In this document: positions 462-47,922 of the stretch, in pieces
Numbering within the stretch: position 1 is the first letter of the stretch
How the letters are laid out: each line of letters begins with the position of its first letter
Virus record (IMG/VR): IMGVR_UViG_3300043409_000928
Location: 221,305 to 285,304 of that record
Length of the DNA stretch: 64,000 nucleotides
Reading direction: 5' to 3' (one strand)
Notes under the pieces: model-generated
Told to the model about the DNA's origin: nothing
The model's input: the letters and a program-made list of their open reading frames with translations, nothing else
Database searches by the model: none
Position numbers and translations under genes: made by a program

Positions 462-1709
462 TTATTTCAACTGTCTAGGGCCGGAAGTGTTGGTAAGACG
501 TGTGCCAGATGGAGTCTTTTCAGCTTTGGCCTGTTGCTTGGCCGCTTTGGCTTGTTCTTTGTCTGCTTTGGCCTGTTGCTTGACCGCATCTTTTTCTGCT
601 TTGGCCGCGGCGTTGGCACCAAAAGTGGTGTCAACAATTTCCATCTGCGGATAAGGTAAACGCACATCTTTGGTACTGGTCAAGTATGCTGTGCCTGCAT
701 GTAAGCGAACACCGCTGGCTGAAAGTTCCTCAGCAGTTTTAAACCAGATGGAACTGATTGGGTCAGTGGTAAGATTCATGTACAATACACCATCATCATC
801 CTTCTTACTCATATAGTAGTTAAAGCTGGCCTGTGAGTATGATTGTAGTGCCGCACCTAGATTGCTTTGGTATATTCCATCTATAATGTCATTCACACTG
901 GCCGCATTTGCTGTGCCACTACCACCAAATATCAATGTGACAAGATTTTCTAACTGTGTGAAGAATGATTCATATTCTTCTTTCATTTCTGCGGCTTCAA
1001 AGTATTCTTTAATAGCAATGGCCTGCTTGATACTAAGACCACTGGCAGGCATTGTAATTTCGTTGCCCAATTTATCTTTAACAAACTTATTAAGTGCTGT
1101 AGCAGCCGCTTCAAATCCGTTGCCTGGTCGAACTTCTTGGTCAGTGAATCGACCTGCACCGCCATCAGTTGTTTTACATTCAACTTTTACTTTGCCTACC
1201 ATTAGGTCGCCCTTGTCTGGCTTGCTAATGCTCTTGCTCATGACATTAAGACCAAATTCGCCTTTGCCCTGTCCCAGTGCGGCCACACGCATTAGATCGT
1301 TGGCAATTTCTTTAATAGCAGGGTTAGTGCCATATGAAGTTACAATGTCAGCAAAGTTGTGTTTCTTGCCTTGGTCTAGCAGAACATTGTGCTTGATTAA
1401 CTTGTCACTACGCCACAATGTGAACAACTCATCACGCTGTGCTGGTTCCATATCAATGCTTAGGATATAACGAGCAATCAGTTTCTGTGCTTGATCCACT
1501 GCCGGATCTTTGATACTTGCTAGTTCATTGTTGATAATGCCCATCTTGCCACCGGCGTTGACATTCTTTAATAGATCTTCAATTTCTCTAAGAGCTTTGA
1601 TGGTGGCATCGTCTGCTGGCAAGCCTTTAATTTTACCAGAGATGATTGCTTTCAGTGCATCTAAGTCTGCTGTATCTGGTGCTTCTTTGAGTAATGATCT
1701 AAGTAACAT
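462..1709 (-). CDS. Putative internal head protein with PD-(D/E)xK nuclease-like motif and Lys/Ala/Gln-rich tail
   Basis: N-term MLLRSLLKE|A; GEFGL...PDKGDLMV...VECKT resembles E...D...ExK nuclease motif; C-term KAEKDAVKQQAKADKEQAK repeats. Confidence 0.5.
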   Translation of the reverse strand: MLLRSLLKEAPDTADLDALKAIISGKIKGLPADDATIKALREIEDLLKNVNAGGKMGIINNELASIKDPAVDQAQKLIARYILSIDMEPAQRDELFTLWRSDKLIKHNVLLDQGKKHNFADIVTSYGTNPAIKEIANDLMRVAALGQGKGEFGLNVMSKSISKPDKGDLMVGKVKVECKTTDGGAGRFTDQEVRPGNGFEAAATALNKFVKDKLGNEITMPASGLSIKQAIAIKEYFEAAEMKEEYESFFTQLENLVTLIFGGSGTANAASVNDIIDGIYQSNLGAALQSYSQASFNYYMSKKDDDGVLYMNLTTDPISSIWFKTAEELSASGVRLHAGTAYLTSTKDVRLPYPQMEIVDTTFGANAAAKAEKDAVKQQAKADKEQAKAAKQQAKAEKTPSGTRLTNTSGPRQLK

Positions 1710-2425
1710 TATATTGTAATTCCGTCTCTGGCAAGTGTTTCGCGAGCATCTGCTAGTATAGCATCTGCATCTGGGTTACCATCCAGTCTTGATAGAATCT
1801 TTTCTACGCTGGTAATGTCCCCACGAGTTGCACCGTCACCTAACAGTGTTTGTGCAATTTCATCTGGGTCTGTACTGATAACCTGATTGGTTTCTCTGTT
1901 GATTAGTCCAGTGGTAGGACTCCACTTGAATCCTTTGTGCTTGGCCACTGCACTCATGACCACGTGCTTGTTGGCATCTTTGAAGTTGCTTTGTGGATCA
2001 GCGGCCATTGCAAATTTAGCAAACTCAAGGTTAGGTAGAAACATAAAGTCTGTTTGTACGTAACCTCGATCTGGGCTTCCACCAATTGGCGTAAGGAAGT
2101 GTACACTTACACCTGACTTCCTGATTGCTGACTTTGGATCAACATTGTGCTTACTGCACCATGCGCTGAGTTTAGCAATCAGCTCGTCTTTGGTGGCAAC
2201 TGGTGGCATGCCAATATCTAAGTCTCCACTGGTGGGCTTTTTACCAGTGGTACCCAGCATGTGTGGCAAATGCTCATAGTTGGTGATTGTTTCCAACCAA
2301 CGAACTGTGGGCTCAACATCAGCTTGGTTAATGCGTTGAGTGAGAATTTCCCCGTCCTTGCTTTTAAAGACATTGCCGCCTTCTTTGACAATTTGACGGA
2401 CCACTGTGAGTTCACGCAACAACAT
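1709..2425 (-). CDS. Pol beta-family nucleotidyltransferase-like protein, putative internal head protein
   Basis: GTTGKKPTSGDLDIG (G[ST]...DxD) and later VQTDF; N-term MLLRELTVVRQIVKE|GGNVF. Confidence 0.6.
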   Translation of the reverse strand: MLLRELTVVRQIVKEGGNVFKSKDGEILTQRINQADVEPTVRWLETITNYEHLPHMLGTTGKKPTSGDLDIGMPPVATKDELIAKLSAWCSKHNVDPKSAIRKSGVSVHFLTPIGGSPDRGYVQTDFMFLPNLEFAKFAMAADPQSNFKDANKHVVMSAVAKHKGFKWSPTTGLINRETNQVISTDPDEIAQTLLGDGATRGDITSVEKILSRLDGNPDADAILADARETLARDGITI

Positions 2426-2782: not shown

Positions 2783-5700
2783 CTAATTAACCAATAATTT
2801 GGCTATCTCATTGCGATACTTAGCCAGCATGATTCGAGTTTTGTTTGCTTTTTCAACTGCACCAGGTGTAGCGGCTTTATCAAACTTGCTGGAATTGATT
2901 ACTTTGTCTAATTTTTCTGCGTATACACGGGAGATTTTCTGCATAAAGTCTTGACTGTTGGCAATGGAATCCAGTGCTCCTGTGCCAAATAGTTCAGCAG
3001 TTTCAAAGTCTGTGGCCATGGCATGAATTGTTTTGACAATGTCACTCAATCGCTGTTCGTCTTTGAGCCCACCGTGTTGCGCCAAGTTGCCCGGCACAAC
3101 GGGCTTGGTGCCGTGTGCCAATTGATAGTAATAGGAATACATGTCCCCGCCCCAATTGTGCGGATCAATGCTTACTGTGCTCAATTGCGTGTCTTTGCTT
3201 TGACGGAAGCTGACTGGTTGCCCGCCACGTGTCTTAACTTGTACGCCTTGTATGCCAAAGCTCATGTTTAATACTTCAGCAACGCTACTCATTAGGCTGG
3301 TGCTGATAACACCCTTGACACGATATTCTGGTGCTAGTGCTCGTGCCCAATCGGCATGTTCGTTATAGGTGTAAATTAAATCAACCTGTATGGGACCTGC
3401 GCTGGTATCCATGATAACATTGGTACCGTTGCTGGTATTGTATTCAGTGTGGCTGTCTGCAAACGACTTTACAGCATCTGCATACTCACTGGTGCGTCGG
3501 GCGGCACCTACACCCTCTCTGCTGTGAATATAGCACACAACATCTACATCACCGTATTCACGAGTAGGATCTGCTGTTAGGTCACGCTTGTAATAGGTAC
3601 CGGACCCAACAGGCTTGCCCATTCTAATTTCAACATCCAGTTCATTCTCAGCTTGCCAAGCATTAAATTCTCTTTCAAAGTGATCCAGCACATTGATTGC
3701 TTCTTCGATCACATGCGGAGTAATCACAGTATTTTGGGTGGCGGCACTGGCCCAGCCACCTTCTGTGATTGATTCGGTCTTCGGAGCCTGTTGTTCTTTA
3801 TACCATTCCCAAGCTTGATTGTTTATTTCTCTGCCAACTGTTCTTCTATAGTAACCTATAAGGCCCACTAGTTTTTGAGTTTCATCCCATACGGCTGAAG
3901 CGTCTTTACCAAACCACGGCTTGAAATCATCACTCTGCGCCCATTCTTTACAATGCTGTCTAAGTTTACTACCATCTGGATCATATGCTTGCCATGCTCT
4001 ACTGCCGGCCAACTCTACATCCAAGTTATCAAACAGGGTTTGTTCAATCAAGGCAGGTGTAATTACTCCTGATTCTTTTTTGTTGTCGATAGTCCGGAGT
4101 TGTTTGATAACTCTTGGATCTAATACTACACCCTGCGTTGGTTCATTGTAGGCAATCCAACCGTGGCCAGGGTCGAACACACTGGTAAAGCCCAAGTCTC
4201 TAAGCACCTTGTTCCAGCGAACAATATTGGTTTCATCACTCTTGCCTAATCTGCTTAAACAATCGTAGATGAACCAGTATGGTGTACCATCGAATTCATC
4301 TTCTTCAGCTGCCTGTTGCATTATTTCTTCTGAACAATACTGACTTAATGCTTGTTTTAATTTGGCACTATCAACTTGTGTTTCTTTTGTCATTTCACCT
4401 GAACGGTCATATTGAAACAACTGGATGTAGGGCATGTCTTCGCCCCATGGTAGTTTTTTACCACTGCGTGCCATGTCTACCGCATAGCCTAAAGGATAAA
4501 AGTAAATGCCTTTAGGAGTATCTTCACTAATACCTACTTGCGGGTTGATACCTAGCTTGGGTTCTGCTGTCATACTGATAGCCCAATTCTTAATGTCGCC
4601 CAAGGTCTTAGCAACAGCCTGCAACTCTTTCATACCTGACGCTGGCCGTGTATTTTGATCTGGATTAGCTCTTGCTTCTGGCAACTGTGCTGATTCATTT
4701 AGTGCAGAATCTGCAAACCAAGGGTCTATGATTACCAGCTGACCATTCTTTCTTTGCATTACATTTTCTGTATGCAAGTCCCAGCCAAACTTGTTTATCC
4801 TACCTGCCTTGTACAGTATCTGCATAACACCATACAATGTATGAAGCTCTTTGAACTTTGAATTATCATCTGCAAATGTCAAGTCTTGCCAGTACTTGGC
4901 CAGGTTGGCGGCCTGTCTTGGATTGTACTCCGTCCAGGTATCAGCCAACCCCAGTGCATGGTCAACTGCGTCCCAGGATTCATCGCCGGCTACAAAATCA
5001 CTAAAGAACCAGACCACACCTTCATTGAATGAATTTTTCTTGATAGGACTCAATCGTTCCATGTCAATTTGTGTGTACTCTCGGTCCAGTACGCTGATTT
5101 TATTATGTTCATTGATCACTGGCAAGCATTCCAAGTTCTGATGTGCCAGGCAGAATTCATAAAACTTGTTGAATACTTGTTCGGCTTGACTGCCAGGATC
5201 TGGCATTAATATTTTAATAATGTGACCTTTGTTTTTGGCCCACACAGTTGAATCGGCACCTGAGCCTACCTGCTTGTAACCCAATGCTGTAAATTCTTTT
5301 TCAATTTGGTCAGCATGTGCTGTGCCTGTTTCTGCTTCCGCCACACCTTGTGGGTTGCCTAATCTCCTAACAGGAATTTTATATTGTTGTATCAGGCTGT
5401 CAATCTCTGGCGGAATGTCGGCAGGCAATACAATTTCTTTAATTTTCCAATTGTCAACCAACACTTCGTGATGGGTTGACGTATCCATACTTAAAGTGGG
5501 ATCAATTTGCCCTGGTCGGCTAACATATTTTTGTTGTCCTCGTTGTCCTGCAGTCATTTTATATTGATCTGACCCCAAATCTGCACGCCCACCAATTGTA
5601 ATATGACCGTCGAGTACAATACCTACGGTTGGATTAGATCCGCCGCCCCACCTATTTTTTCCTAAAGATTCAGCGTTTGGTGCTAGGTAGGCGCTTAGTT

Positions 5701-8479
5701 CAATCTTGTTATTCACTTTTCCTTGCAAGAATGACTCTAATTGGTTCAATGGAGCCCAGTGTACTTTTAGCATTGCCGCGGCTTTTTTAGCATCCATTTT
5801 TTGTTGAAATAGTTGTTTAAGATATTTTTCAGCACTGTAAGATTTAGTATTCATATCTTTACCAGCATCAAGTGTAGATAATCTTTCATACTCGGCCTTT
5901 TCTTGAGGAGTCATCCAGGCATAATTGTTTAGTTCAGCATCTATTCTTCTTTGAAATTCGGTATTATATAAATTTTTCAATTCTGGATTTGTTTTATATA
6001 ATGCCAAACGATCCTTCATTGGCATTGCTGATATCTGGTCATAGTTGAAACTACCAGTGGTATCTTCCGCCACACCTTGCTTGGGAATCAACAACTCAGG
6101 CATGCGATATTCACTAACATCTACTGGATATGGCTGTAATGATGCTTTGTATGCCTCAGCATACTGTTGTTTTTCCACTGTGGTTTTGGCTCTGTAAAAC
6201 TTGTTGGCAATGGCCATGTCGCCCACCAAAGTTCCCGGTGGAATTGAAATCTTTTTTGGACCGTAGTATTTTAATTTGTCAGAATCTTTGTTGGTCAAAC
6301 TGTAAAAGGTTGATTCCCATTTGTCTGGGTGCAAGGCATATTGTGCAGTTGCTCGTTCTGGAACAAACTGTGCCAGTGTATCTGCACCGGGATGAAATTT
6401 ACCCAACTTGGATAAACTTATAGCAGTATCATTGCTTTCGCCTTCCGTCACACCTTGTTTTATTCTGCTTAATTCATATCTAACTATAGTACCAGTGTCT
6501 GCACGGAGAGGCCTATAGCCCCAAGCACGAGCATAACGAATCACCAGTCTATCATATAACTTGGCACGACTTTCACTGTTTTGGTCAGGCTCCACTTCTT
6601 TGCTGGCAGAGAATGTCAATCGTTTTGGATTGTGTTCTTTAATGTATTGCTGGATGGCGGACAATACTGTGGCAAATACTCGTTGAGCATCACCGTCACC
6701 AGTGACTTCTTGGCTGTTGTTTCTGTGGAACTCTACTTGTATGACTTCTTCACCTTCTTCATCATACTCCATGTTGAACATGATGCTGAGGTTAGAACCA
6801 TCTGGCAAGCGAGCTAGAGCATCCATAGAATCATCAGCTTCGCTCTTTTCCCATGACATGGGATAAGGTTGATCAAAAGCTTCGTCAAGACTTTCAGGAG
6901 TCCAGGCCATATTTTTAGCACCTTTCACTGTGGGTTTAAATCCTTGGCTCTTATAAAACTTGGTCAGCTTGGCCTGACTGACTTGCCCTTTGTCCCAGGG
7001 GAATAATGTCAATGCAATGCCTGCATCTTTGGCCAAGGCCTGCAGTTCTTGCATGGCACGACTGCCCACGCCTTGCCGCAATGGATACGCTTGAATCCAT
7101 TTGACTTCTACTGCGCCTCGTCGACTAAAACTTGGCGTCAGCTCAAACATGGCAAACTGTTGATCGTCACCTGTTCCGCCCAGGGGCATGACATGATTGT
7201 TTTGAAAAGTCTGAGGATATTTTGTATATACTGCGTCAATGAAATCTGTAACTTTAGTATCAGCTTCAGTTAAGTTTTCGTTAGTAGGAACTTCACCCAG
7301 GCCAATTTTACCCGGATACATTGCACCGTCTCGAACTCGTTCGCCGCCATCAAAGTAACGTATTTCAATGGGCATGTCTGGCCAGTTTAATCTGTATGCG
7401 GCCATGATGCGGTGATTGCCTTCGTTGACCCAAGCTTCGCCATTATAGGCCACCATGATATAAGGCAAGTATTCATCATCGGGATTGTTGCCTGGAGGTA
7501 GCTTGCCTGTGCGTTCCATATAGTCCATCAACCATTTCAAGTCATCTCGACGCACATTGGTTTGTTCGTTACGCATGCCTGGCAGTGACGCCAGTCGCAT
7601 TACACGCACTCTAGGCGGAGTACCACGCACACTTGCTGTGGTACTGCCCATGTAAGGCACGCCAAAACTGTTGCGACCCTTGCTCTTGGCATAGTCAATT
7701 TTGTCTTGTAGCCAGTCTTCGTTAGGCACATCTATACTCAGGGTGCCCTCTTCTATCACTGCTTCGTCTACAGGACCACGATCAGCGGCCACTGCACTGG
7801 CAATATCCCACCACTCGCCGGGAAAGTATTCTACTTGTAACATGCTGGCAGGTACTGTGCCGGGAACAATTATCTGTTCATCATCGCGCTCAATGCCGTT
7901 TTTATTTTCTGGGTATGCTCCAAACTTTGCCACCAGGTCAGCCCATTTGACACGGAACATGGTGGCTTGTTCTTTGTCGACATGATAGTAGCCACCTTCG
8001 GGATCGTATGCAAAATACACACCTGGACCAGCATATCCATCTGCACTGGGCAGTAATCCTTTACGCAATACGCTGTCTAGTCCACGGGGCATGTATCCTG
8101 CATGGTACACATACTCACCTGGGCCAGCACTTTCTTCTAACTGTAACACAGGTACAAATGCAGGGATAGTGGACATGCCCAGCTCTAGTGCCTTGGTTGC
8201 ACGGTGATTGCCATCTATAATATAACCTTGACTGTCAGCCACAATGGGGCGAGTAGCAATGTCATGGTCAGTAAGGTCGTCCACATAATCAAAATCAATG
8301 TCCAGCACACGATTATATGGGTCGGTCTTTTCGCCAAATTCATTTAGTTCAAGACTGTCAATGTCAATCTTTTTTAATTCCCATTGTGGAACACTGGCTA
8401 TCACGCTGTCTAATTTAAATCCTTTTTTATGGATCTTTTTAATGTAAGTCAATACTTGTGCGCTGGTAAATGTTTTCAT
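2783..8479 (-). CDS. 1898-aa multi-enzyme polyprotein (ParB-like x2, ART-like, GNAT, kinase-like, nucleotidyltransferase, unknown modules)
   Basis: IIDGNHR and VNEGNHR (ParB-like); YHAG..GLLP..VYF..E (ART-like); RQGVGS..LTKFYKSQGF (GNAT); VGSGADSTVW..IIKI..DLHTENVM..IIDP (kinase); GSG..GDVDV..QVDL (NTase); modules separated by [LIV]xE linkers. Confidence 0.8.
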   Translation of the reverse strand: MKTFTSAQVLTYIKKIHKKGFKLDSVIASVPQWELKKIDIDSLELNEFGEKTDPYNRVLDIDFDYVDDLTDHDIATRPIVADSQGYIIDGNHRATKALELGMSTIPAFVPVLQLEESAGPGEYVYHAGYMPRGLDSVLRKGLLPSADGYAGPGVYFAYDPEGGYYHVDKEQATMFRVKWADLVAKFGAYPENKNGIERDDEQIIVPGTVPASMLQVEYFPGEWWDIASAVAADRGPVDEAVIEEGTLSIDVPNEDWLQDKIDYAKSKGRNSFGVPYMGSTTASVRGTPPRVRVMRLASLPGMRNEQTNVRRDDLKWLMDYMERTGKLPPGNNPDDEYLPYIMVAYNGEAWVNEGNHRIMAAYRLNWPDMPIEIRYFDGGERVRDGAMYPGKIGLGEVPTNENLTEADTKVTDFIDAVYTKYPQTFQNNHVMPLGGTGDDQQFAMFELTPSFSRRGAVEVKWIQAYPLRQGVGSRAMQELQALAKDAGIALTLFPWDKGQVSQAKLTKFYKSQGFKPTVKGAKNMAWTPESLDEAFDQPYPMSWEKSEADDSMDALARLPDGSNLSIMFNMEYDEEGEEVIQVEFHRNNSQEVTGDGDAQRVFATVLSAIQQYIKEHNPKRLTFSASKEVEPDQNSESRAKLYDRLVIRYARAWGYRPLRADTGTIVRYELSRIKQGVTEGESNDTAISLSKLGKFHPGADTLAQFVPERATAQYALHPDKWESTFYSLTNKDSDKLKYYGPKKISIPPGTLVGDMAIANKFYRAKTTVEKQQYAEAYKASLQPYPVDVSEYRMPELLIPKQGVAEDTTGSFNYDQISAMPMKDRLALYKTNPELKNLYNTEFQRRIDAELNNYAWMTPQEKAEYERLSTLDAGKDMNTKSYSAEKYLKQLFQQKMDAKKAAAMLKVHWAPLNQLESFLQGKVNNKIELSAYLAPNAESLGKNRWGGGSNPTVGIVLDGHITIGGRADLGSDQYKMTAGQRGQQKYVSRPGQIDPTLSMDTSTHHEVLVDNWKIKEIVLPADIPPEIDSLIQQYKIPVRRLGNPQGVAEAETGTAHADQIEKEFTALGYKQVGSGADSTVWAKNKGHIIKILMPDPGSQAEQVFNKFYEFCLAHQNLECLPVINEHNKISVLDREYTQIDMERLSPIKKNSFNEGVVWFFSDFVAGDESWDAVDHALGLADTWTEYNPRQAANLAKYWQDLTFADDNSKFKELHTLYGVMQILYKAGRINKFGWDLHTENVMQRKNGQLVIIDPWFADSALNESAQLPEARANPDQNTRPASGMKELQAVAKTLGDIKNWAISMTAEPKLGINPQVGISEDTPKGIYFYPLGYAVDMARSGKKLPWGEDMPYIQLFQYDRSGEMTKETQVDSAKLKQALSQYCSEEIMQQAAEEDEFDGTPYWFIYDCLSRLGKSDETNIVRWNKVLRDLGFTSVFDPGHGWIAYNEPTQGVVLDPRVIKQLRTIDNKKESGVITPALIEQTLFDNLDVELAGSRAWQAYDPDGSKLRQHCKEWAQSDDFKPWFGKDASAVWDETQKLVGLIGYYRRTVGREINNQAWEWYKEQQAPKTESITEGGWASAATQNTVITPHVIEEAINVLDHFEREFNAWQAENELDVEIRMGKPVGSGTYYKRDLTADPTREYGDVDVVCYIHSREGVGAARRTSEYADAVKSFADSHTEYNTSNGTNVIMDTSAGPIQVDLIYTYNEHADWARALAPEYRVKGVISTSLMSSVAEVLNMSFGIQGVQVKTRGGQPVSFRQSKDTQLSTVSIDPHNWGGDMYSYYYQLAHGTKPVVPGNLAQHGGLKDEQRLSDIVKTIHAMATDFETAELFGTGALDSIANSQDFMQKISRVYAEKLDKVINSSKFDKAATPGAVEKANKTRIMLAKYRNEIAKLLVN

Positions 8480-8481
8480 AA

Positions 8482-9327
8482 TTACATTACCAATATTTTG
8501 CCTTCAAGATTGGACATTACATCGTTAAACATAAGTTCCATATCTCCGGACAGCATTTCAGTTGCATGAGTTCTACTGGCATCATCTCTGGCCTCAGGCT
8601 TTAAATTTAGATACTTGGAAGGTGAGCCCCAGGCCTGACGTCCGTAGCCCAAGTTACTGGGCAAGGGATTAAAAGTCACATGGCCTGTACCCAGGTATTG
8701 TGCAAATATTTCGTATAAGAATTCATAGGGTCTGCGAATCTGATTACTGCGACTACTTTTTTGTGTGCCTATAGCATTGAATAGGGCATTGTATTCAGGT
8801 GTCAACTCTGATTTTAAGTTGCCGCCACGCTCACCACTCTTACCATAGTATTCTTCCAGCATGGAATTAACCTGTCCAAAGAAATGATTTTCTGCCGACG
8901 GCCATGCACCTTCTCGATCTATTTTCCCGCCCCTGCGGTGACCTGCTTGCACAGCATGTCCAAACCTATGAGCCATAAGCCAGGGTGTAAGCATTTGCTT
9001 GGCGTCGCCTTTGTTGCCCACATACACTATGGTAATGGCATTTTCATGGCCAGCAACAATTTGCTCACCGTCATCTCCAAAGATGATTTTAACTGTCGCT
9101 GGGTCCATTGGGCCGTATTCACTGTATCGCCCTGTGCCTGAGATGTTGCTGAAAAACAGTCTGATATCGTAAGGAGTATTGGCAAAGAACTTTTCTGCTT
9201 TTAAACGATTCATTGGATGCGGAATCAGCTTTTTATCAGCACCACGAAATGGCCCAGGCTTGTCAAAGTCACCCAATGGCACATAATCTGCCATTGGGAC
9301 TTCGTTAATTAAATCGCGTATTTTCAT
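8482..9327 (-). CDS. Hypothetical protein, putative internal head protein
   Basis: 281-aa ORF; N-term MKIRDLINE|V propeptide-like. Confidence 0.6.
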   Translation of the reverse strand: MKIRDLINEVPMADYVPLGDFDKPGPFRGADKKLIPHPMNRLKAEKFFANTPYDIRLFFSNISGTGRYSEYGPMDPATVKIIFGDDGEQIVAGHENAITIVYVGNKGDAKQMLTPWLMAHRFGHAVQAGHRRGGKIDREGAWPSAENHFFGQVNSMLEEYYGKSGERGGNLKSELTPEYNALFNAIGTQKSSRSNQIRRPYEFLYEIFAQYLGTGHVTFNPLPSNLGYGRQAWGSPSKYLNLKPEARDDASRTHATEMLSGDMELMFNDVMSNLEGKILVM

Positions 9328-9932
9328 GCCATGTCGCCTATCTTTAGGTGATAGCCAAACTTTATACTATAGCGTACATCATTGGAACTGTTGCTGCCGC
9401 TGTGCCAACTACTTGCCCAATTGGCCGAGTACCAGCCTTGCCCAAACGCACAGGGCATTACATTTGGAAAATTGCCTGCACGATCGTTGTAGAATACAGT
9501 ACTTTTTTCTTCTATTTCATCTTTATTAAAGAACACCATGCCTGCAGTAACAATTGTACGATCATCAACATGTATGGTAGTGTCAAATCCTGGCAGATCC
9601 CTGCAGACTTCATGATATGGCAGTATGTGTAATTTCAGTTGTTCATAGGTAATATTGCTCCACTCCTGCTGGAAAAGTGAACTTTCCCACAACTTGGCCA
9701 ACAGTATTTCTTGAGCATCATCTAAACTCTTGGCAAATTTAGACAGTACAGGCAAATGGTCTATATCCCAAGCTGTTTGTCTAAATGACCATTTTGAATT
9801 CTCATTATCCCCTCCGGGAAGTTCAGAAGACTGCCGCCATGCCACCTGTTCAAATTCCAATCCGTTAGGCACTTCAAACTCTAGTAGATACAGCAGAGAT
9901 CTGTCCTCAGTAATAGATTTAATTATATCCAT
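9324..9932 (-). CDS. 2OG-Fe(II) oxygenase-like protein
   Basis: HxD (IHVDD), distal H (SWHSG), R (VRYSI). Confidence 0.55.
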   Translation of the reverse strand: MDIIKSITEDRSLLYLLEFEVPNGLEFEQVAWRQSSELPGGDNENSKWSFRQTAWDIDHLPVLSKFAKSLDDAQEILLAKLWESSLFQQEWSNITYEQLKLHILPYHEVCRDLPGFDTTIHVDDRTIVTAGMVFFNKDEIEEKSTVFYNDRAGNFPNVMPCAFGQGWYSANWASSWHSGSNSSNDVRYSIKFGYHLKIGDMA

Positions 9933-9950: not shown

Positions 9951-12272
9951 TTAATGAAACAACAAATAGCTACCGATTACATCGTTGCGATTGGCACTGT
10001 TATCTCCATCGCCTGGCATTACAATGGTATTCCATTTTGGCTTGTCGCCAACAGGAGTCTTCATCATTTCATCATATGTTAAAATACTGTTCTTATCTAT
10101 AGCGTATTTCTGCGCCATAATTGATTTGAATTGGTCAAGATTTTCTGCGCTGGCAAACTGCATACGGCCTTTGGCATCTTTCTTTAAATTGTTACCATCA
10201 CGGGCAATTAGGTCAAAGAACATGTCTTTGGGAACTACCTTGCTGTGCTTGACACGCTGAAAATCAATTTTCTTTTCCTGACTGCTCAATGCGCCACCAG
10301 AGAAATTCATATTAAAGTTCTTTGGTCGTTGTCCTGTGGCAACATCGGCCATTTTAGTATAAGCATAAAAGCCCACGTCTGGGTTGGCCGTGGCCACACC
10401 ATAGGCCATGTCTAGATATTCAGCACTGAAGAAGTCACCTGCATCGTGCCAACGCACCACAACCTTGGCATTCTTTTTGGCCATTTTACTTTTGGCGGCA
10501 GCAATTTCTGCATTTAATTGACTTGCAAAGCCTTGGGGATCGTTCAACAAGAAGTTCAGCATACGAGCCAAGCCCATGCTGACTGCTTTGAACATCACAT
10601 AGCTACCTTTCATTGCGTAGCAGAATGTCTTACATGCGCCAGCACCTGGACAAGTGTCTACCACAACAAACTCTCCGGTCTTTTCATTTACAGCCAGACC
10701 TTTGAGTGCAGGCAAGCCAATGTCAAATATGGCTTCTGTGCCTGTTTCGCTGTGTTGCATCTTGGCATTTTGTCCAAGAATTCGTCCAGGACGAACCATA
10801 ATAGATTTCTTTAATGCTTCAGCGTCAAATGTTTTACCGCCTTCATCTTTGACTTGAATATTGCTACCGTGAATATATGGATAATCAAACTTGTCACGCT
10901 TGGTCTTTGTTTTGTTTTTACTGCGACCCATTAGGTCTTGCATTTCTGCATCTGGAACAGCACGGTAATTGGCACCTAGACCAAAGTCACCTGGCGCTTC
11001 TGCTATATTCTTTTTAATTTCACCGGTATTGGGATTTTCATGATCGCCACGCTTGACACCAGACTTATAAACTTTCTCACCTGTGCTTGGGCTTATATAG
11101 TAATCACCTTTAGAATCTGTACCAATGCTTTTCACTTTGTATTTCTCGCTGCCTTCCGCCACACCTTGGTTGACGCTTTCGTTTTGTCTGACCATTTTCA
11201 TTAGTTTATCATAATATGGTCTTGTTTTATTTTCTATTCGTCTGGCAATCTCTTTATCATTTCTAAATTTACGATCATACTCCCATGCCTGATCTTGTGT
11301 TAAGCCAGCGGCTTTACCAGTTGGATCAATTGGATAATTATTCAATCCTTTAATCTCGTTAATTGAGTCTCTTGCTGTCTTCGTTCCCTTATGATAAGAC
11401 ATTTCTAGGTTATCATTGTCACTGGATGCTACTTCTACTTTTGCTTGAGAATGTAAGTCAAACATTTCATTACTCCACTTTGACATTTCCGTGTTTGAAT
11501 TTAACATTAATCCAGATATCATATTATAAACATATCCAAGTAAAAAATACGCCTGTGTATTACTTGGCATTTGTAATTTAGAAGTTTTTTCTTTTTTGCC
11601 AATCTCGTAACCAACACCACCACCAGCCGCACCTGCCACAGCCGCCGCACCCAAGCCTTTTAAGAATCCTCTACGGTCTATTTCATCAATTTGACTTTCA
11701 TTTAAGTCACCAAATGGCAAGTACCAAAACCAATTTTCAAAGCCACCTGGATTGGTATCGTAGTCCTGGTGTGCGCTGTTACGGGCACTCATCATCATAC
11801 GCTTGAATTCACTCACAGCGCCATTCTTTTCAGCCACTGCTTCTAGTGCATCATATAATTGGCCAGCTTTAAAACTATCTCTATGCTTTTCAATTCCCGG
11901 TGCCAGCTCATCATACACATCAGCAAATTGCAAATGTAAGTCGCTCATTACACCTTCTTTGACTGTGTCTTCTACTGTGCCTACATAATTGTGATCGTGT
12001 ACTTGATAGCCTTGCTTCTTGTACCATTTGACGGCTGTGTCACAGGCCTGTTCGCGACCGTCTGCTGTGACAGAACACATTCTTTGTCGAGTTTCACCAC
12101 GCTGACTAACAGCAGTATGGTTAGGATCGCTTACTGTAACAGCAACCTTGTGTTTTTGGCGGCCTTCTACTGCTTCTTCGACTTCTTTTTCATCATCTTT
12201 AACAAAAGCATCCAAGCTCATTACAGTAAGTCCGTGTAGTTTGCCTACACCAGCCACTTCGAATATTTTCAT
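9951..12272 (-). CDS. 773-aa polyprotein with internal twin-arginine motif and C-terminal GP88-like (radical-SAM-like) domain
   Basis: MKIFEV N-term; linkers AVE|G, VKE|G, IDE|I, QGVAE|G, IAE|A; RRGFLKGLGAAAVAG; CPGAGACKTFCYA and RWHDAGDFFS. Confidence 0.7.
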   Translation of the reverse strand: MKIFEVAGVGKLHGLTVMSLDAFVKDDEKEVEEAVEGRQKHKVAVTVSDPNHTAVSQRGETRQRMCSVTADGREQACDTAVKWYKKQGYQVHDHNYVGTVEDTVKEGVMSDLHLQFADVYDELAPGIEKHRDSFKAGQLYDALEAVAEKNGAVSEFKRMMMSARNSAHQDYDTNPGGFENWFWYLPFGDLNESQIDEIDRRGFLKGLGAAAVAGAAGGGVGYEIGKKEKTSKLQMPSNTQAYFLLGYVYNMISGLMLNSNTEMSKWSNEMFDLHSQAKVEVASSDNDNLEMSYHKGTKTARDSINEIKGLNNYPIDPTGKAAGLTQDQAWEYDRKFRNDKEIARRIENKTRPYYDKLMKMVRQNESVNQGVAEGSEKYKVKSIGTDSKGDYYISPSTGEKVYKSGVKRGDHENPNTGEIKKNIAEAPGDFGLGANYRAVPDAEMQDLMGRSKNKTKTKRDKFDYPYIHGSNIQVKDEGGKTFDAEALKKSIMVRPGRILGQNAKMQHSETGTEAIFDIGLPALKGLAVNEKTGEFVVVDTCPGAGACKTFCYAMKGSYVMFKAVSMGLARMLNFLLNDPQGFASQLNAEIAAAKSKMAKKNAKVVVRWHDAGDFFSAEYLDMAYGVATANPDVGFYAYTKMADVATGQRPKNFNMNFSGGALSSQEKKIDFQRVKHSKVVPKDMFFDLIARDGNNLKKDAKGRMQFASAENLDQFKSIMAQKYAIDKNSILTYDEMMKTPVGDKPKWNTIVMPGDGDNSANRNDVIGSYLLFH

Positions 12273-16864: not shown

Positions 16865-17065
16865 TTAAGCCTGTTGCCTTGTTGCGTCAGTTGTATTAAT
16901 CCAAGCCATGAAAAGTGATTCCATATCTGCTTTGTCACCAGCCTGCCAGTTTTTTGATGCAACTTCAAATTCTTCAGCAAATTTGCTAACAACCCATTCG
17001 TCAAAATTTTGTTTGCCGTCTTGCAGTTGCCAAATAGTTCCTTCTTGATCTGTCCATGTAGTCAT
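16865..17065 (-). CDS. Hypothetical protein (paralog of 17143-17400)
   Basis: MTTWTDQEG...GKQNFDEWVVSKFA near-identical to neighbour. Confidence 0.75.
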   Translation of the reverse strand: MTTWTDQEGTIWQLQDGKQNFDEWVVSKFAEEFEVASKNWQAGDKADMESLFMAWINTTDATRQQA

Positions 17066-17142: not shown

Positions 17143-17400
17143 TTAAGCCCGGCCGCCTGCTGCCACTCGTGCCGCTGCCGCTTCTGCTTCGTTGCGAGCA
17201 ATTCTTGTTTGATTTACCGCGTCGGTGGTGTTGGCCCAAGCAGAAAAAAGTGATTCCATATCTGTTTTGTCGCCAGCATTCCATTTGGTTGATGCAACAG
17301 TAAACTCGTCAGCAAATTTGCTAACAACCCATTCGTCAAAATTTTGTTTACCTTCTTGCAGTTCCCAGACTGAACCTTCTGCGTCTGTCCATGTAGTCAT
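17143..17400 (-). CDS. Hypothetical protein (paralog of 16865-17065)
   Basis: MTTWTDAEG...GKQNFDEWVVSKFA. Confidence 0.75.
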   Translation of the reverse strand: MTTWTDAEGSVWELQEGKQNFDEWVVSKFADEFTVASTKWNAGDKTDMESLFSAWANTTDAVNQTRIARNEAEAAAARVAAGGRA

Positions 17401-22032: not shown

Positions 22033-22431
22033 TTAACCCTTCAGAATATTTCTGAAATAGGCCACAGCGGCTTCTTCAACCTGTTCGGGTGTGGCATCGT
22101 CAGGTACATCCAACTCTACATCGTCTGTGCTGGCTTCAACTTCCCAATTGAGTCCATCAGGCAGGACCTGATCAATTTCATAGCTGATCAAATCGCCTGC
22201 GGCTGATCCTTGCTCACTGTTGACAATATCAGTACCAAGTTGGAACATATAACAAATTTTTCCTTTGTCGTTCATGTGTTCTAGTACATCATCACTAATG
22301 ACAATGTCACCAATTTCATCTTCAATGATTTCGGTAATGTCTTCAAATTCAGTTTCGGTAAGTTCTCTGTCTACACAGATTCTTACATAGTGTTTAGGTT
22401 CAAGCGTTTCCATAATTCCATCCTTAATCAA
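22033..22431 (-). CDS. Acidic hypothetical protein
   Basis: 132-aa ORF coupled to neighbours. Confidence 0.6.
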   Translation of the reverse strand: MIKDGIMETLEPKHYVRICVDRELTETEFEDITEIIEDEIGDIVISDDVLEHMNDKGKICYMFQLGTDIVNSEQGSAAGDLISYEIDQVLPDGLNWEVEASTDDVELDVPDDATPEQVEEAAVAYFRNILKG

Positions 22432-23269
22432 AATTGAATCCCATTTGCCTTAGACTACTACTTACATTAGTTTTAGTCCATGATACTGCCATCCGTTCTA
22501 CCAGTCTCGTTGAGTAGCTGTAATTGCTATTGCCATCAAAGTAAACTTTATCATAATCTACAAATTCATCAAATTTTGTAGGCTCATATTTGCCGTTATG
22601 TAAAATGACCTTTGTTTGTATTCTCGGTTTGACCTTCCTCTGATGCACGGGCCATACTGGATGACCAACTGCCATGCCAAAAATTGGAAATGTTAGTTTG
22701 GGAAAACCAAACTCTTTTTCAAATAGTTCAACTGGTATTTGTCTAATTGCACCACAATACATTATGCCCAATTTCATTGATTCTGCCGCACTGGCAAAGG
22801 CCTGCGCGGCAATTGTTGCATCAATGATTGCCTTTAAATGATATTCGGCTCTGCTTGTTTGTTTTAAAATCTCACTACTAAAAGGAGTTGTTTTATGAAT
22901 TTCATGTAATAAAAAATCTATCCTGGACAGGTCAGCAATCCATATCAAGAAAACTGGAGCAGTCTTGATTACCCCAACATTGTAAGAATCAACTGCACCA
23001 ATGGCCTCTCTGGCCAGTCTTGTTGAAAATAATTTTTCTTTGTCTTCTGCGGTAGTTAAAGCCAAGACACTATAGGTCTGCAACATGCCACTGGTTGAAG
23101 CACTTTGCGCCACTGCCAATAAAACTTCTAATGTTCCAGCATCCAACGGTTGTGTTTTAAAATCTCTAACGGTAGACCTTGACAGTTGAGATTGAATATA
23201 GTCATTTAATGGAATGTTGGGAGTGTCCAATGGCAGGCCAAACCTACGCTGATATAAATTTAAATCCAT
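22424..23269 (-). CDS. NfsA/Frp-family nitroreductase (flavin reductase)
   Basis: RSTVRDF, AQSASTSGMLQTYS, DATIAAQ..AAESMKLGIMYCGAIR, GMAVGHP. Confidence 0.85.
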   Translation of the reverse strand: MDLNLYQRRFGLPLDTPNIPLNDYIQSQLSRSTVRDFKTQPLDAGTLEVLLAVAQSASTSGMLQTYSVLALTTAEDKEKLFSTRLAREAIGAVDSYNVGVIKTAPVFLIWIADLSRIDFLLHEIHKTTPFSSEILKQTSRAEYHLKAIIDATIAAQAFASAAESMKLGIMYCGAIRQIPVELFEKEFGFPKLTFPIFGMAVGHPVWPVHQRKVKPRIQTKVILHNGKYEPTKFDEFVDYDKVYFDGNSNYSYSTRLVERMAVSWTKTNVSSSLRQMGFNFD

Positions 23270-27573: not shown

Positions 27574-27587
27574 TTTGTTATTCTCTC

Positions 27588-27986
27588 TTATTCAATTCTT
27601 TGTAGTGCAATATAGATACTATAAGTTGCACTGGTTGCGGATCCAATTTTACAGCTCATCGTAACTGTATTGGCATTCAAGGTCAATACAATTGCACCAT
27701 TGAAACCTTCTTCAAATGTATCTTCAATCTTAGTTATGCCAGATCCAACAGTGATGGTTCCACGCAATTGTTTAGTAACTCTGTTGCCTAAGTTGTCTGT
27801 ACCAAATAATTTTAACTCATAAAATTCTGTTCCTGCCACTGATAGTTGATTGCCATTACGATCCAGTGCGTTTGAATCAGCGCCGGCACATACAGCACCA
27901 AACACCATTTGTCTTACACTGACTGCACCTTCGCCAATGCTAAATTCACTTGAGGTTGTACCTGCTATGTTGTTATATGTTTTCAT
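27588..27986 (-). CDS. Putative structural protein
   Basis: Beta-rich 132-aa ORF within tail module. Confidence 0.55.
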   Translation of the reverse strand: MKTYNNIAGTTSSEFSIGEGAVSVRQMVFGAVCAGADSNALDRNGNQLSVAGTEFYELKLFGTDNLGNRVTKQLRGTITVGSGITKIEDTFEEGFNGAIVLTLNANTVTMSCKIGSATSATYSIYIALQRIE

Positions 27987-29971: not shown

Positions 29972-29980
29972 GTTGTTCCT

Positions 29981-47078: not shown

Positions 47079-47079
47079 T

Positions 47080-47922
47080 TTAGTTTACTTGTATGCCGGC
47101 CAATAACCAACCACCAGAGGATTTTGACTTGGTCATGTTCCAAACTTCTTCGAATGCCTCAGCTTCTGCCCCCACGGTGTCTTGTATTGTGCCTGTAAAT
47201 TCCACACTGGCTATGTAATTGACATCAGTTTCTTCTATGCCCAACATTTTCACTGTCAATGATATCACCGCTGTTCTATATACCTGGGTAGCATCGCGAG
47301 ATGCAATTTGTTGTTGGATCTCCGTCAACATGGTATCTGTCATCATACTGCCTAGGGTGGTGATATCTGCCCGGTCCCATGCGCCTTGTAACAACACGAA
47401 GTTTTGTTTGGCGGCAGATTCGAAACCTGCTACATCAAACCCTGCAGGAATGGTCCAAGTGGGGGCCAGCGCAGATCCAATCATTGAACCACCTGAGAAC
47501 CGTGTGGGTTGATCAATTACAGCATTGGTGCCAGCGCCTTGATAAGCAAGGTCAGGTGAACTGGCCATCATACGCCGACGCATGAACCAACCTATTGCTC
47601 CTAACACCACAGCACCAATCAACAGCGCCATCATAATATTGCCAAATGCCTCACCCATGCCCAGACTGCTGGCTAACCAAGCCAGACCCAAGCCTGCCGC
47701 CAGTCCACCCAACATTGCACCCCATGGACGACTAGGTGTTGGTGCAGGTGCCGCGGTTGGTGGTGTAGCTTGTGCCGGAGGTGCGGCCTGTTTTTTAGTC
47801 ACATTAGAACTTTGTTGGCCCACGCTTTTGCCGCCGCCCATGCGTTTATTACCGGCTTCGGCAATCACACTGGCAAACCCCACGATGCTTATTAATAAAA
47901 TTGCAATAAACTTTTTCATATT
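47080..47922 (-). CDS. Tim44-like domain protein with signal peptide
   Basis: KRMGGGKSVG, GGLAAGLGL, FVLLQGAWD, EEVWNM..WLLAGIQ. Confidence 0.85.
   Translation of the reverse strand, partial: NMKKFIAILLISIVGFASVIAEAGNKRMGGGKSVGQQSSNVTKKQAAPPAQATPPTAAPAPTPSRPWGAMLGGLAAGLGLAWLASSLGMGEAFGNIMMALLIGAVVLGAIGWFMRRRMMASSPDLAYQGAGTNAVIDQPTRFSGGSMIGSALAPTWTIPAGFDVAGFESAAKQNFVLLQGAWDRADITTLGSMMTDTMLTEIQQQIASRDATQVYRTAVISLTVKMLGIEETDVNYIASVEFTGTIQDTVGAEAEAFEEVWNMTKSKSSGGWLLAGIQVN

What the first reader, a model, noticed from the sequence alone, without database searches (positions are those of the whole stretch)
2783..8479. Ten-module enzyme polyprotein punctuated by prohead-protease-like [LIV]-x-E sites
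Seen: junctions at aa 116 (LEE|S), 239/244 (VDE|A, IEE|G), 405 (LTE|A), 533 (LDE|A), 679 (VTE|G), 805 (VAE|D), 1048 (VAE|A), 1262/1268 (LNE|S, LPE|A) and 1573 (ITE|G). They delimit ParB-like, ART-like, ParB-like, GNAT, unknown, unknown, H..S..E ART-like, kinase, unknown and nucleotidyltransferase modules. Known: T4 gp21 cleaves head proteins after (I/L)-x-E and processes internal proteins that are injected. Inference: one gene delivers about 10 host-modifying enzymes in the capsid, active before phage transcription.
Basis: partly seen in the sequence, partly recalled or inferred. Interest (0 to 1): 0.88.

Follow-up and report, generated by a model that had tools for sequence, protein, structure and literature searches.

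The report
Phage cargo polyprotein with cleavable linkers
One 1,898-residue protein of an uncultured freshwater jumbo phage joins ten or eleven enzyme modules with short linkers that match the cutting site of the T4-type head protease, so it is most likely a "polyvalent" protein cut into separate host-modifying enzymes: a known kind of protein with a new, testable processing scheme.

Summary
Homology breakpoints in 84 mosaic relatives fall within 5 residues of those sites. Across the family, [LIVM]-x-E marks 70% of 609 breakpoints against 19% of random positions. Asp at P1 and small residues at P3 are not enriched. The logo is [QEK][GS]-V/L/I/M-x-E|[AGS], which matches T4 gp21 specificity (L/I-x-E).

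New here: four neighbouring genes carry 9-15-residue leaders that end in the same motif. In related loci, 50 of 72 stand-alone leader genes align with modules embedded in polyproteins, with the leader's Glu in exact register with a junction Glu.

The protein belongs to the known polyvalent-protein class (Iyer et al. 2017), but it has no embedded peptidase. Capsid packaging and cutting by a gp21-type protease are inferred, not shown. No head genes lie in the window, and I could not locate the protease on this contig. All cultured relatives have one.

The QGVAE linker is also conserved as an exact 15-mer, which suggests it doubles as a recombination joint.

Verdict: a new variant of a known kind. 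Module calls are partly confirmed.

The parts
2783..8479 (-). Polyvalent protein gene, 1,898 aa, no internal stop, no HExxH motif
8132..8479 (-). M1, aa 1-116, ParB/DdrB-like; ends in LEE|S. It has no N-terminal leader.
   Evidence: PHROG ParB hit at 1e-4. Embedded copies in homologues are preceded by LSLE| or NIDE|.
7763..8131 (-). M2, aa 117-239, possible H-Y-D/E ADP-ribosyltransferase-like module; ends in VDE|A
   Evidence: Invariant H126, Y155, D199/D200 and E217 in 10 homologues. No HMM or fold confirmation.
7748..7762 (-). Five-residue spacer AVIEE between the tandem sites VDE| and IEE|
   Evidence: Homologues that start at M3 carry the leader MKI(T/N/S)DIK(V/Q)LKE| at this point.
7265..7747 (-). 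M3, aa 245-405, ParB/sulfiredoxin-like (GNHR motif); ends in LTE|A
6881..7264 (-). M4, aa 406-533, GNAT acetyltransferase; ends in LDE|A
   Evidence: Pfam PF00583 at 0.002. 40 homologues carry this module.
6443..6880 (-). M5, aa 534-679, DUF6934-like; ends in QGVTE|G
   Evidence: Pfam PF22028 and PHROG 16075 at 6e-14. A stand-alone form occurs in Vibrio nt-1-like phages.
6065..6442 (-). M6, aa 680-805, unknown function; ends in QGVAE|D
   Evidence: 22 homologues, with different neighbouring modules
5336..6064 (-). M7, aa 806-1048, a rare family with conserved H907, S929, Y985 and E1005; possibly ART-like; ends in QGVAE|A
   Evidence: Only 30 representatives among 1.84 billion proteins. AF2 pLDDT 89.8, with the final QGVAE disordered. 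Foldseek was not significant, but PARP/ART domains head the list.
4694..5335 (-). M8, aa 1049-1262, protein kinase (T7 gp0.7-like / Kinase-PolyVal); ends in LNE|S
   Evidence: PHROG 15752 at 3e-10; Pfam PF18762 weak. A stand-alone form with a leader is at L194:4644-5306.
4676..4693 (-). Six-residue spacer SAQLPE between the tandem sites LNE| and LPE|
3761..4675 (-). M9, aa 1269-1573, unknown function; possible extra site GISE|D at aa 1319 (about window 4523); ends in ITE|G
   Evidence: 20 homologues. AF2 shows low-confidence segments at aa 1309-1323 and 1565-1577.
2786..3760 (-). M10, aa 1574-1898, Pol-beta-fold nucleotidyltransferase
   Evidence: GSG..DVDV motif. Foldseek hits to Pol beta, CD-NTases and Rel with probability up to 1.0, E 2e-3.
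5336..5350 (-). Exact 15-mer CAAGGTGTGGCGGAA encoding QGVAE (junction 1048). Further copies at 6065-6079 (exact) and 6443-6457 (one mismatch).
   Evidence: 4 copies in the window against 0.16 expected. It uses the rare Ala codon GCG.
11154..11168 (-). The same 15-mer inside the neighbouring 773-aa gene, at QGVAE|G, aa 373
   Evidence: The homology break in this gene lies at about aa 365.
8482..9327 (-). o281: conserved cargo-like gene with the leader MKIRDLINE|VPMADY..., 2 nt upstream of the polyprotein's start codon
   Evidence: 568 homologues with Glu-9 invariant. The same module is embedded after QGVAE| in P0061 and after LEE| in P0017.
9324..9932 (-). o202: leader MDIIKSITE|D
9951..12272 (-). 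o773: mosaic protein with a variable N-terminal part, an internal QGVAE|G site and a GP88 (PF17338) C-terminal domain
1709..2425 (-). o238: leader MLLRELTVVRQIVKE|GG; conserved downstream of the polyprotein gene
462..1709 (-). o415: leader MLLRSLLKE|A

Best explanation
The gene encodes a polyvalent protein: a chain of 10-11 unrelated enzyme modules. They are two ParB-like modules, a GNAT, a protein kinase, a Pol-beta nucleotidyltransferase, DUF6934, two possible ADP-ribosyltransferase-like modules and two of unknown function. It belongs to an uncultured freshwater jumbo phage related to PA5oct, Phosso and Atu_ph07.

The modules are joined by short disordered linkers with the consensus [QEK][GS]-(V/L/I/M)-x-Glu | (A/G/S). 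I infer that the protein and its neighbouring leader-bearing genes are capsid cargo. I also infer that the phage's T4 gp21-type (Pfam PF03420) head-maturation protease cuts after each linker Glu, as gp21 cuts after L/I-x-E in T4 internal proteins and Alt. The separate enzymes would then enter the host with the DNA and act before phage genes are expressed.

Shown: the modular architecture, the junction motif and its specificity, the disorder at junctions, and the equivalence of junctions to N-terminal leader ends. Inferred: packaging, cleavage, the identity of the protease and the timing.

Secondary inference: the conserved 15-nt QGVAE joint also serves as an in-frame recombination point that shuffles modules between polyproteins and stand-alone leader genes.
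For: (1) Breakpoints of module shuffling coincide with the sites. In this protein 9 of 9 lie within 5 aa. In 85 proteins, 70% of 609 breakpoints lie within 6 aa of [LIVM]xE, against 19% of random positions.

(2) The specificity fingerprint matches gp21. The share of each motif lying at breakpoints is: [LIVM]xE 28%, baseline 7%, [LIVM]xD 4.7%, [LIVM]xQ 7.5%, [AGS]xE 7.6%, VAE 55% and VAD 2%. T4 gp21 cuts after L/I-X-E, and Asp at P1 of the T4 capsid targeting sequence blocks processing (PMC9026906). phiKZ and SPN3US use S/A-X-E, which does not fit.

(3) Four flanking genes start with 9-15-aa leaders that end in the motif.

(4) 72 stand-alone leader ORFs align from their N-terminus to internal positions of polyproteins. 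In 50 of them the leader's Glu-9 is in exact register with a phi-x-E junction, against a background of 1.65% per position. This covers about 20 distinct embedded module starts, including the kinase, DUF6934 and o281.

(5) The same leader type heads a gene in freshwater PF03420 head clusters. In the two loci annotated, the order is leader protein, 796-aa protein, portal, 345-aa protein, protease, scaffold, MCP. All 17 hits lie about 7 kb upstream of the protease on the same strand. The MCP N-termini there keep L-x-E|(S/T/N).

(6) AF2 puts junctions in low-confidence coil and the non-junction sites in structured regions.

(7) Relatives of o281 lie within 10 kb of T4-like TerL or tail sheath genes. 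That TerL is closest to PA5oct (54.5%). PA5oct, Phosso, Atu_ph07 and the Rak2-like phages all encode a gp21-type protease.

(8) This protein has no embedded peptidase motif.
Against: There is no direct evidence that the protein is packaged or cut.
- No head genes lie in the 64-kb window or in the 94 kb of this contig that I could read. Four database attempts did not place a PF03420 gene on this contig. Output caps make that uninformative rather than negative.
- I found no single contig that carries both a PF03420 protease and an o281 or polyvalent gene.
- The polyprotein itself has no N-terminal leader.
- T4-type late promoters (TATAAATA) are absent from the window.
- 22 of 85 family members carry an embedded HExxH module that may be a metallopeptidase.
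- The QGVAE linker is conserved at the nucleotide level, well beyond what selection on the peptide needs. At least part of the junction conservation could therefore reflect recombination rather than proteolysis.
Confidence: 0.55

Rival explanations
1. The linkers are cleavage sites, but a different protease cuts them. Candidates are a zincin-like metallopeptidase of the kind embedded in many polyvalent proteins (acting in cis or in trans, before packaging or after injection), another phage protease such as the S8 subtilase at 23271-24821, or a host protease.
For: Iyer et al. 2017 propose embedded MPTase domains as the processing enzymes of polyvalent proteins (PMC5512222). 22 of 85 family members carry a conserved RT.AHE..H...GETGS module, with a weak Pfam hit to the putative metallopeptidase family DUF6782 (2e-4). 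Six close homologues carry an AAHEACH module where this protein has its GNAT. The conserved neighbour o281 has invariant H120-x3-H124 and E146.
Against: This protein and 63 of the 85 family members lack the HExxH module yet keep the same junction motif. No such module was found in the 94 kb of this contig that I read. o281 has Arg where a zincin has its catalytic Glu, and it shows no profile similarity to the HExxH module (hhalign probability 1.7%). From general knowledge, not tested here: a strict P1-Glu, P3-hydrophobic preference that excludes Asp is the signature of gp21-type serine proteases, not of zincins or subtilases. The N-terminal leaders mirror the T4 capsid targeting sequence.
Confidence: 0.15
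2. The protein works as an uncut multi-domain enzyme. On this view the conserved linkers are flexible spacers whose conservation comes from their role as in-frame recombination joints (microhomology) for module shuffling, not from proteolysis.
For: The exact 15-mer CAAGGTGTGGCGGAA occurs 3 times, plus one copy with a single mismatch, in the window against 0.16 expected. All four copies lie at junctions and bracket M6 and M7. In related loci, 33 of 56 in-frame QGVAE motifs use this exact 15-mer, although GCG is only 6% of Ala codons, so about 0.5% would be expected. Homology breakpoints fall exactly at the linkers. Some polyvalent proteins, such as N4 vRNAP, ArdC and TraC1, are transferred uncut (PMC5512222).
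Against: Most junctions are not QGVAE. They share no nucleotide sequence and keep only hydrophobic-x-Glu at the peptide level: VTE, LDE, ITE, LNE, VNE and others. Asp never replaces Glu. The motif also ends the N-terminal leaders of stand-alone genes, where no joint is needed, and it does so in exact register with embedded junctions. Recombination and proteolysis are compatible, so this is more a complement than an alternative.
Confidence: 0.15
3. The protein is a cytoplasmic polyprotein made after infection and is not capsid cargo. It may or may not be processed.
For: The immediate neighbourhood holds auxiliary genes rather than head genes: CsgG/CsgF-like, a cyclase and a desaturase downstream, with tail fibre genes about 17 kb away. 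There is no late-promoter consensus. The protein has no leader.
Against: The leader and junction grammar equals that of T4 capsid targeting and processing, and it occurs on a gene inside PF03420 head clusters. Relatives of the cassette sit next to TerL or the tail sheath. The domain repertoire (ParB/DdrB, ART, GNAT, kinase, NTase) is that of proteins argued to be injected (PMC5512222).
Confidence: 0.1

Closest known systems
Polyvalent proteins of phages and conjugative elements (Iyer, Burroughs, Anand, de Souza, Aravind 2017, PMC5512222)
   Same: One polypeptide holds many unrelated catalytic domains. The repertoire is the same: ParB/DdrB-like, ART, GNAT, the truncated Kinase-PolyVal, and Pol-beta NTase. 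The family is extensively mosaic, and smaller ORFs encoding the same domains lie nearby, like cassettes.
   Different: That paper attributes processing to embedded metallopeptidase (MPTase) domains. It does not use the word "linker" at all, and "prohead" appears only in its reference list. Here the protein has no peptidase. Every junction carries a gp21-type site, stand-alone versions carry leaders like the capsid targeting sequence, and one linker type is fixed as a 15-nt sequence.
T4 internal proteins IPI-III and Alt: capsid targeting sequence plus gp21 processing
   Same: Short N-terminal propeptides end in hydrophobic-x-Glu. P1 Glu is required and Asp is not tolerated. Highly diverse mature domains sit behind a conserved leader. 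Alt is an injected ADP-ribosyltransferase (PMC9026906, PMC3012670).
   Different: T4 cargo proteins are separate small genes that lose a propeptide from the N-terminus (Alt also loses one from the C-terminus). Here up to 11 mature domains are fused, with internal sites. The leaders are 9 aa rather than 10. The fused protein has no leader of its own. There is no sequence similarity to T4 proteins.
phiKZ / 201phi2-1 / SPN3US ejection and inner-body proteins cut by gp175 / gp245
   Same: These are jumbo-phage capsid cargo cut after Glu by a diverged gp21 homologue, sometimes at several sites in one protein (PMC10052503, PMC9026906).
   Different: Their motif is S/A-X-E, which is not enriched at the junctions here (7.6% against a 7% baseline). 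Their multiple cuts degrade propeptides rather than release a series of enzymes.
Polymorphic toxin cassettes and RNA-virus polyproteins
   Same: Polymorphic toxins recombine cassettes into a main locus. RNA-virus polyproteins release functional units by proteolysis at conserved junctions. Iyer et al. draw both analogies.
   Different: There is no secretion or immunity-gene context, and the domains and proteases are unrelated.

Membership tests
Polyvalent proteins (Iyer et al. 2017) | Multiple (2-15) biochemically disparate domains in one polypeptide | tested here: met
   10-11 modules, delimited by homology breakpoints; they include ParB-like, GNAT, kinase, NTase and DUF6934 modules
Polyvalent proteins (Iyer et al. 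2017) | Encoded by a phage or conjugative element, in a packaging or late-gene context | tested here: inconclusive
   The element is clearly a phage: a 285-kb IMG/VR contig with tail fibre, clamp loader and ClpA-like genes as in PA5oct and Atu_ph07. Head genes are not nearby. Relatives of the cassette lie within 10 kb of TerL or the tail sheath.
Polyvalent proteins (Iyer et al. 2017) | Characteristic domain repertoire, including the family-specific Kinase-PolyVal | tested here: met
   Pfam PF18762 match at aa 1234-1255 (weak, 0.051), supported by PHROG 15752 at 3e-10 over aa 1052-1254. ddrB-ParB PF18763 is weak in homologue P0036.
Polyvalent proteins (Iyer et al. 2017) | Embedded MPTase or other peptidase for autoprocessing (frequent but not obligatory) | tested here: not met
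   No HExxH or HxxEH motif in the protein. A putative metallopeptidase module is present in 22 of 85 relatives.
T4-type gp21-processed capsid cargo | Cleavage motif L/I-X-E at accessible positions | tested here: met
   Met at the sequence level only. All junctions are [LIV]-x-E. The family logo is V/L/I/M at P3, E at P1 and A/G/S at P1', with D excluded. Junctions are disordered in AF2 models.
T4-type gp21-processed capsid cargo | N-terminal capsid targeting sequence of about 10 aa, removed by the protease | tested here: not met
   The polyprotein starts directly with M1. The neighbours o281, o415, o238 and o202 and many homologues do have such leaders.
T4-type gp21-processed capsid cargo | A gp21-type (PF03420) protease encoded by the same genome | tested here: inconclusive
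   It is not in the window. It was not retrievable from the remaining 190 kb because search outputs are capped. All cultured relatives have one.
T4-type gp21-processed capsid cargo | Protein or its fragments present in virions and injected | not testable with these tools
   The phage is uncultured. No cultured phage carries a homologue of o281, and cultured phages share only module M5 of the polyprotein.
ADP-ribosyltransferase fold (M2 and M7) | ART fold with an H-Y-E/D or R-S-E catalytic triad | tested here: inconclusive
   M7: near-invariant H, S, Y and E; confident AF2 model; PARP, ART and Vis toxin domains head the Foldseek list, but the best E is 0.16 and TM about 0.2. The viral library gave only uncharacterised proteins. 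M2: invariant H126, Y155, D199/D200 and E217, with no HMM or fold test.
Pol-beta superfamily nucleotidyltransferase (M10) | hG[GS]x9-13Dh[DE]h motif and the Pol-beta palm fold | tested here: met
   VGSGTYYKRD...GDVDVV is in the sequence. Foldseek hits Pol beta, CdnC/CdnB/CdnE and Rel/SpoT with probability 0.9-1.0, E from 2e-3.

The most novel reading that the evidence does not exclude
A large clade of uncultured freshwater jumbo phages runs a plug-and-play capsid-cargo system. Dozens of enzyme modules move freely between stand-alone genes, which carry a 9-aa targeting leader, and giant polyproteins. A universal joint makes this possible. At the peptide level it is the head-protease cutting site. 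At the DNA level (CAAGGTGTGGCGGAA and its relatives) it is the in-frame crossover point for shuffling. One short sequence would then encode both the release of the cargo and its evolvability.
Probability: 0.35. Interest if true: 0.8.

Novelty: new variant of a known kind. Interest (0 to 1): 0.64.

Why it matters
Polyvalent proteins are thought to be a phage's first strike against host defences, but how their domains are released is largely conjecture. This family offers a concrete rule that can be read from sequence: cut after hydrophobic-x-Glu at every module joint, with an equivalent 9-aa leader on stand-alone modules.

The rule can be used to predict capsid cargo in metagenomic jumbo phages. 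It defines mature enzyme boundaries for expression and assay. It also suggests a natural design for loading several proteins into capsids. The nucleotide-level conservation of one linker hints at a mechanism for in-frame domain shuffling.

Tried and rejected
Locating the head protease on this contig failed.
- tblastn with T4 head proteins found nothing in the window.
- A protease HMM found nothing in 160 related loci.
- The search for related loci with a gp21 alignment, a freshwater protease and a tail sheath, and the search for homologous proteins with contig-length matching, all hit the best-80 or best-120 output caps without listing contig IMGVR_UViG_3300043409_000928.
- Walking the contig with the look-up of encoding contigs reached only record position 201,853 and found tail or lysis-like and auxiliary genes.

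Other dead ends:
- There is no near-identical or distant DNA relative among cultured phages.
- Sequence searches of PDB and Pfam give almost nothing for most modules.
- o281 as a degenerate zincin: there is a suggestive H-x3-H motif, but no profile or PDB support.
- T4 late promoters: none found.
- A generic N-terminal [LIVM]xE regex is non-specific, matching 34 of 100 ORFs. I replaced it with the stricter leader pattern.
- The phiKZ-type S/A-X-E motif is rejected because it is not enriched at junctions.
Full report
**What is there.** Window 2783-8479 (- strand) is one intact ORF of 1,898 codons. It lies in a tightly packed minus-strand operon. The stop codon of the upstream 281-aa gene is 2 nt from its ATG. 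The window is the last 64 kb of a 285,304-bp viral contig, JGI Ga0451705_0000005 = IMGVR_UViG_3300043409_000928. The window has about 42% GC. It carries tail-fibre genes, a T4-type clamp loader and a ClpA-like ATPase that is 40-44% identical to those of the jumbo phages Phosso, Atu_ph07 and PA5oct. No cultured phage has DNA similar to the gene. By tblastn, only module 530-650 is found, as a small stand-alone gene in Vibrio nt-1-like phages.

**Checking the observation.** The motif is not enriched overall: 25 sites against 24 expected. A count alone would therefore mean nothing. The test that matters is independent of the motif. A search of 5.8 billion proteins returned 84 relatives that are mosaics of this protein, with high identity over 6-46% of its length. 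The ends of their BLAST alignments on the query cluster at medians 113, 242, 403, 528, 674, 806, 1044, 1263 and 1568 (similar medians). Each is 1-5 residues from a listed site. None of 200,000 random trials reproduced that fit. One more probable site, GISE|D at 1319, lies next to a low-confidence loop and was missed.

**The junction grammar across the family.** In 85 proteins I defined 609 homology breakpoints without reference to the motif. Of these, 70% lie within 6 residues of [LIVM]-x-E, against 19% for random positions. The logo from 395 distinct junctions is [Q/E/K]-[G/S]-(V49/L27/I16/M9 %)-(A/N/T/D)-E | (A/G/S). The specificity is sharp:
- 28% of all [LIVM]xE tripeptides lie at breakpoints, against a 7% baseline.
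- For [LIVM]xD the figure is 4.7%, for [LIVM]xQ 7.5%, for [FYW]xE 5.8% and for [AGS]xE 7.6%.
- VAE is at a breakpoint in 55% of cases and VAD in 2%.

The same Glu is kept when the flanking modules differ completely. This is the published specificity of T4 gp21: cleavage after L/I-X-E, with Asp at P1 blocking processing. It is not that of the phiKZ/SPN3US proteases, which use S/A-X-E (PMC9026906, PMC10052503).

**Structure.** M7 (aa 806-1048), folded with a 29-sequence alignment, gives a confident single domain (pLDDT 89.8, pTM 0.84). Its last five residues, QGVAE, are the only stretch below pLDDT 50. In the model of aa 1049-1898, the low-confidence stretch 1565-1577 spans ITE|G-1573, and 1219-1275 spans the 1262/1268 pair, although M8 is poorly predicted throughout. 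The [LIV]xE sites that are not junctions (1015, 1479, 1592/3, 1735) sit in a predicted strand or helices, in blocks with mean pLDDT of 80-97. Where I could test it, they do.

**Leaders: the strongest new evidence.** The genes flanking the polyprotein begin with short leaders that end in the same motif:
- o281: MKIRDLINE|V
- o415: MLLRSLLKE|A
- o238: MLLRELTVVRQIVKE|G
- o202: MDIIKSITE|D

Many homologous polyproteins begin the same way, for example MKITDIKVLKE|GTLS..., where this protein has ...IEE|GTLS.... o281 belongs to a very conserved family of 568 hits, most about 280 aa long. Its leader follows M-[RK]-x-x-[DE]-[FI]-[LI]-x-E, and Glu-9 is invariant.

In loci around o281 relatives I found 72 distinct stand-alone leader ORFs whose N-terminus aligns to an internal position of one of the 85 polyproteins. 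In 50 of them the leader's Glu-9 is in exact register with a hydrophobic-x-Glu junction, against a background of 1.65% per position. About 20 distinct embedded module starts are involved. Examples are the kinase (MRINDIIVE|AESGT.. against ..SVAE|AETGT..), DUF6934 (..IQE|SFNQPY against QGVAE|GFDQPY) and o281 itself (against QGVAE|APLADY). A module can therefore be delivered either as a separate gene behind a leader or fused behind a junction, and the Glu marks the same boundary in both. [quoted passage not shown]

**Link to a protease.** No T4-like head gene is in the window. I could not retrieve the rest of the contig. Searches with gp21-type proteases and with a sheath protein returned capped lists that did not include it. 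Walking reached only record position 201,853. The indirect evidence is as follows.
- Relatives of o281 lie within 10 kb of a T4 gp17-like terminase or a gp18-like sheath.
- That terminase is closest to PA5oct (54.5%), then Phosso, Atu_ph07 and the Rak2-like phages.
- An abundant freshwater clade of PF03420 proteases has the same set of closest cultured relatives: Phosso 60%, SCTP-2 57%, PA5oct 52% and Atu_ph07 53%.
- All of those cultured phages encode a gp21-type protease.
- In the freshwater PF03420 head clusters, a gene about 7 kb upstream of the protease on the same strand starts with the same leader, for example MRINELILE|QQLDE|L.... This occurs in 17 loci, always at the same position. 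In the two loci annotated it lies two genes upstream of the portal. The MCP N-termini there keep ..L-x-E|(S/T/N).

No contig was shown to carry both a PF03420 protease and an o281 or polyvalent gene. The protease assignment is therefore an inference from related phages.

**What the modules are.**
- M1 and M3: ParB-like (PHROG ParB families; GNHR motif; ddrB-ParB weak in a homologue).
- M4: GNAT.
- M5: DUF6934.
- M8: protein kinase (PHROG T7 gp0.7-like at 3e-10; Pfam Kinase-PolyVal).
- M10: a Pol-beta-fold nucleotidyltransferase (GSG...DVDV motif; Foldseek to Pol beta, CD-NTases and Rel with probability up to 1.0).
- M7: a rare family with 30 representatives among 1.84 billion proteins and no Pfam match. 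It has near-invariant H907, S929, Y985 and E1005. PARP/ART domains head a non-significant Foldseek list, so ART-like is possible but unproven.
- M2: invariant H126, Y155, D199/D200 and E217, a pattern like an H-Y-D/E ART triad, with no further support.
- M6 and M9: unknown.

**Comparison with what is known.** This is a polyvalent protein in the sense of Iyer et al. 2017. It has the same domain repertoire, the same mosaicism and nearby cassette-like small ORFs (PMC5512222). That work proposes release of domains by embedded metallopeptidases. It does not describe conserved junction sites: "linker" does not occur in the text, and "prohead" appears only in the reference list.

This protein has no HExxH motif. 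However, 22 of the 85 relatives do carry a conserved HExxH...E module, with a weak match to a putative metallopeptidase family. Six close relatives have a different HEACH module in place of the GNAT. That keeps a non-head protease alive as a rival. The same junction motif in the 63 proteins without the module argues for a common trans-acting enzyme.

**An unexplained extra layer.** The QGVAE linker is conserved as DNA. The 15-mer CAAGGTGTGGCGGAA occurs three times exactly and once with one mismatch in the window, against 0.16 expected. All four copies lie at junctions, bracketing M6 and M7 and marking the mosaic point of the neighbouring 773-aa gene. In related loci from many samples, 33 of 56 in-frame QGVAE motifs use this exact 15-mer. 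Its Ala codon GCG makes up only 6% of Ala codons here. The 15-mer is absent from the protease-cluster loci. Selection on the peptide does not explain this. The simplest reading is that the joint also serves as microhomology for in-frame module exchange.

**Verdict.** Packaging, cleavage and the protease itself remain inferred. The protein's lack of a leader is unexplained. The class is already known. The processing grammar, the equivalence of leaders and junctions, and the fixed 15-nt joint appear to be new. I found no paper describing them in five full-text searches.

Noticed in passing
window 5336-5350, 6065-6079, 6443-6457, 11154-11168: The QGVAE linker is encoded by an almost invariant 15-mer, CAAGGTGTGGCGGAA, that contains a rare GCG codon. 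It occurs here and in 33 of 56 cases in related loci from other metagenomes. It may be an in-frame recombination joint.
   Followed up: partly
window 8482-9327 (o281): This very conserved 281-aa protein has 568 homologues (the best 120 listed are at least 61% identical) and a cleavable-looking leader. Invariant residues are H120-R-x-G-H124, E146, E202 and E206. It has no Pfam, PHROG or PDB match and no homologue in cultured phages. It always sits next to the polyprotein gene.
   Followed up: partly
window 9951-12272 (o773): A second mosaic protein. Its N-terminal 365 aa vary between relatives, it has an internal QGVAE|G site at aa 373, and its C-terminal part is conserved with a GP88 (PF17338) domain.
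   Followed up: partly
L330 (contig record 201,853-222,134) and L002: Unusual auxiliary genes lie just beyond the window's left edge: a CsgG/CsgF-like curli-secretion pair, a FecR-like protein, a CHASE2-nucleotide cyclase, a fatty-acid desaturase, and then large proteins with a GH19 lysozyme.
   Followed up: no
homologues P0028-P0083 (about aa 330-350) and P0002-P0008: 22 relatives carry an embedded RT.AHE..H...GETGS.(W/Y)E module, with a weak hit to the putative metallopeptidase family DUF6782. Six close relatives carry an AAHEACH module where this protein has its GNAT.
   Followed up: partly
window 23271-24821: A stand-alone S8 subtilase (Pfam 1.8e-27) lies directly beside the tail-fibre genes at 25666-33475.
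   Followed up: no
whole window: The T4 late-promoter consensus TATAAATA is absent (0 against 3.3 expected), although the replication and packaging genes are T4-like.
   Followed up: no
window 34720-36933, 45942-49107, 47080-47937, 22424-23269: A ClpA-like AAA+ ATPase, a radical-SAM protein with a QueD-like gene nearby, a Tim44-like protein and a nitroreductase are all encoded by the phage.
   Followed up: no
L099:639-1271 and 16 syntenic loci: In freshwater PF03420 head-gene clusters, a Gly/Ala-rich protein encoded about 7 kb upstream of the protease starts with the same leader followed by a second site, MRINELILE|QQLDE|LNLKGLG. In the two loci annotated (L099, L125) it lies two genes upstream of the portal. 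It is probably a head-internal protein.
   Followed up: partly
window 16865-17065 and 17143-17400: Two adjacent small paralogous ORFs, both starting MTTWTD..EG..W.LQ.GKQNFDEW.
   Followed up: no
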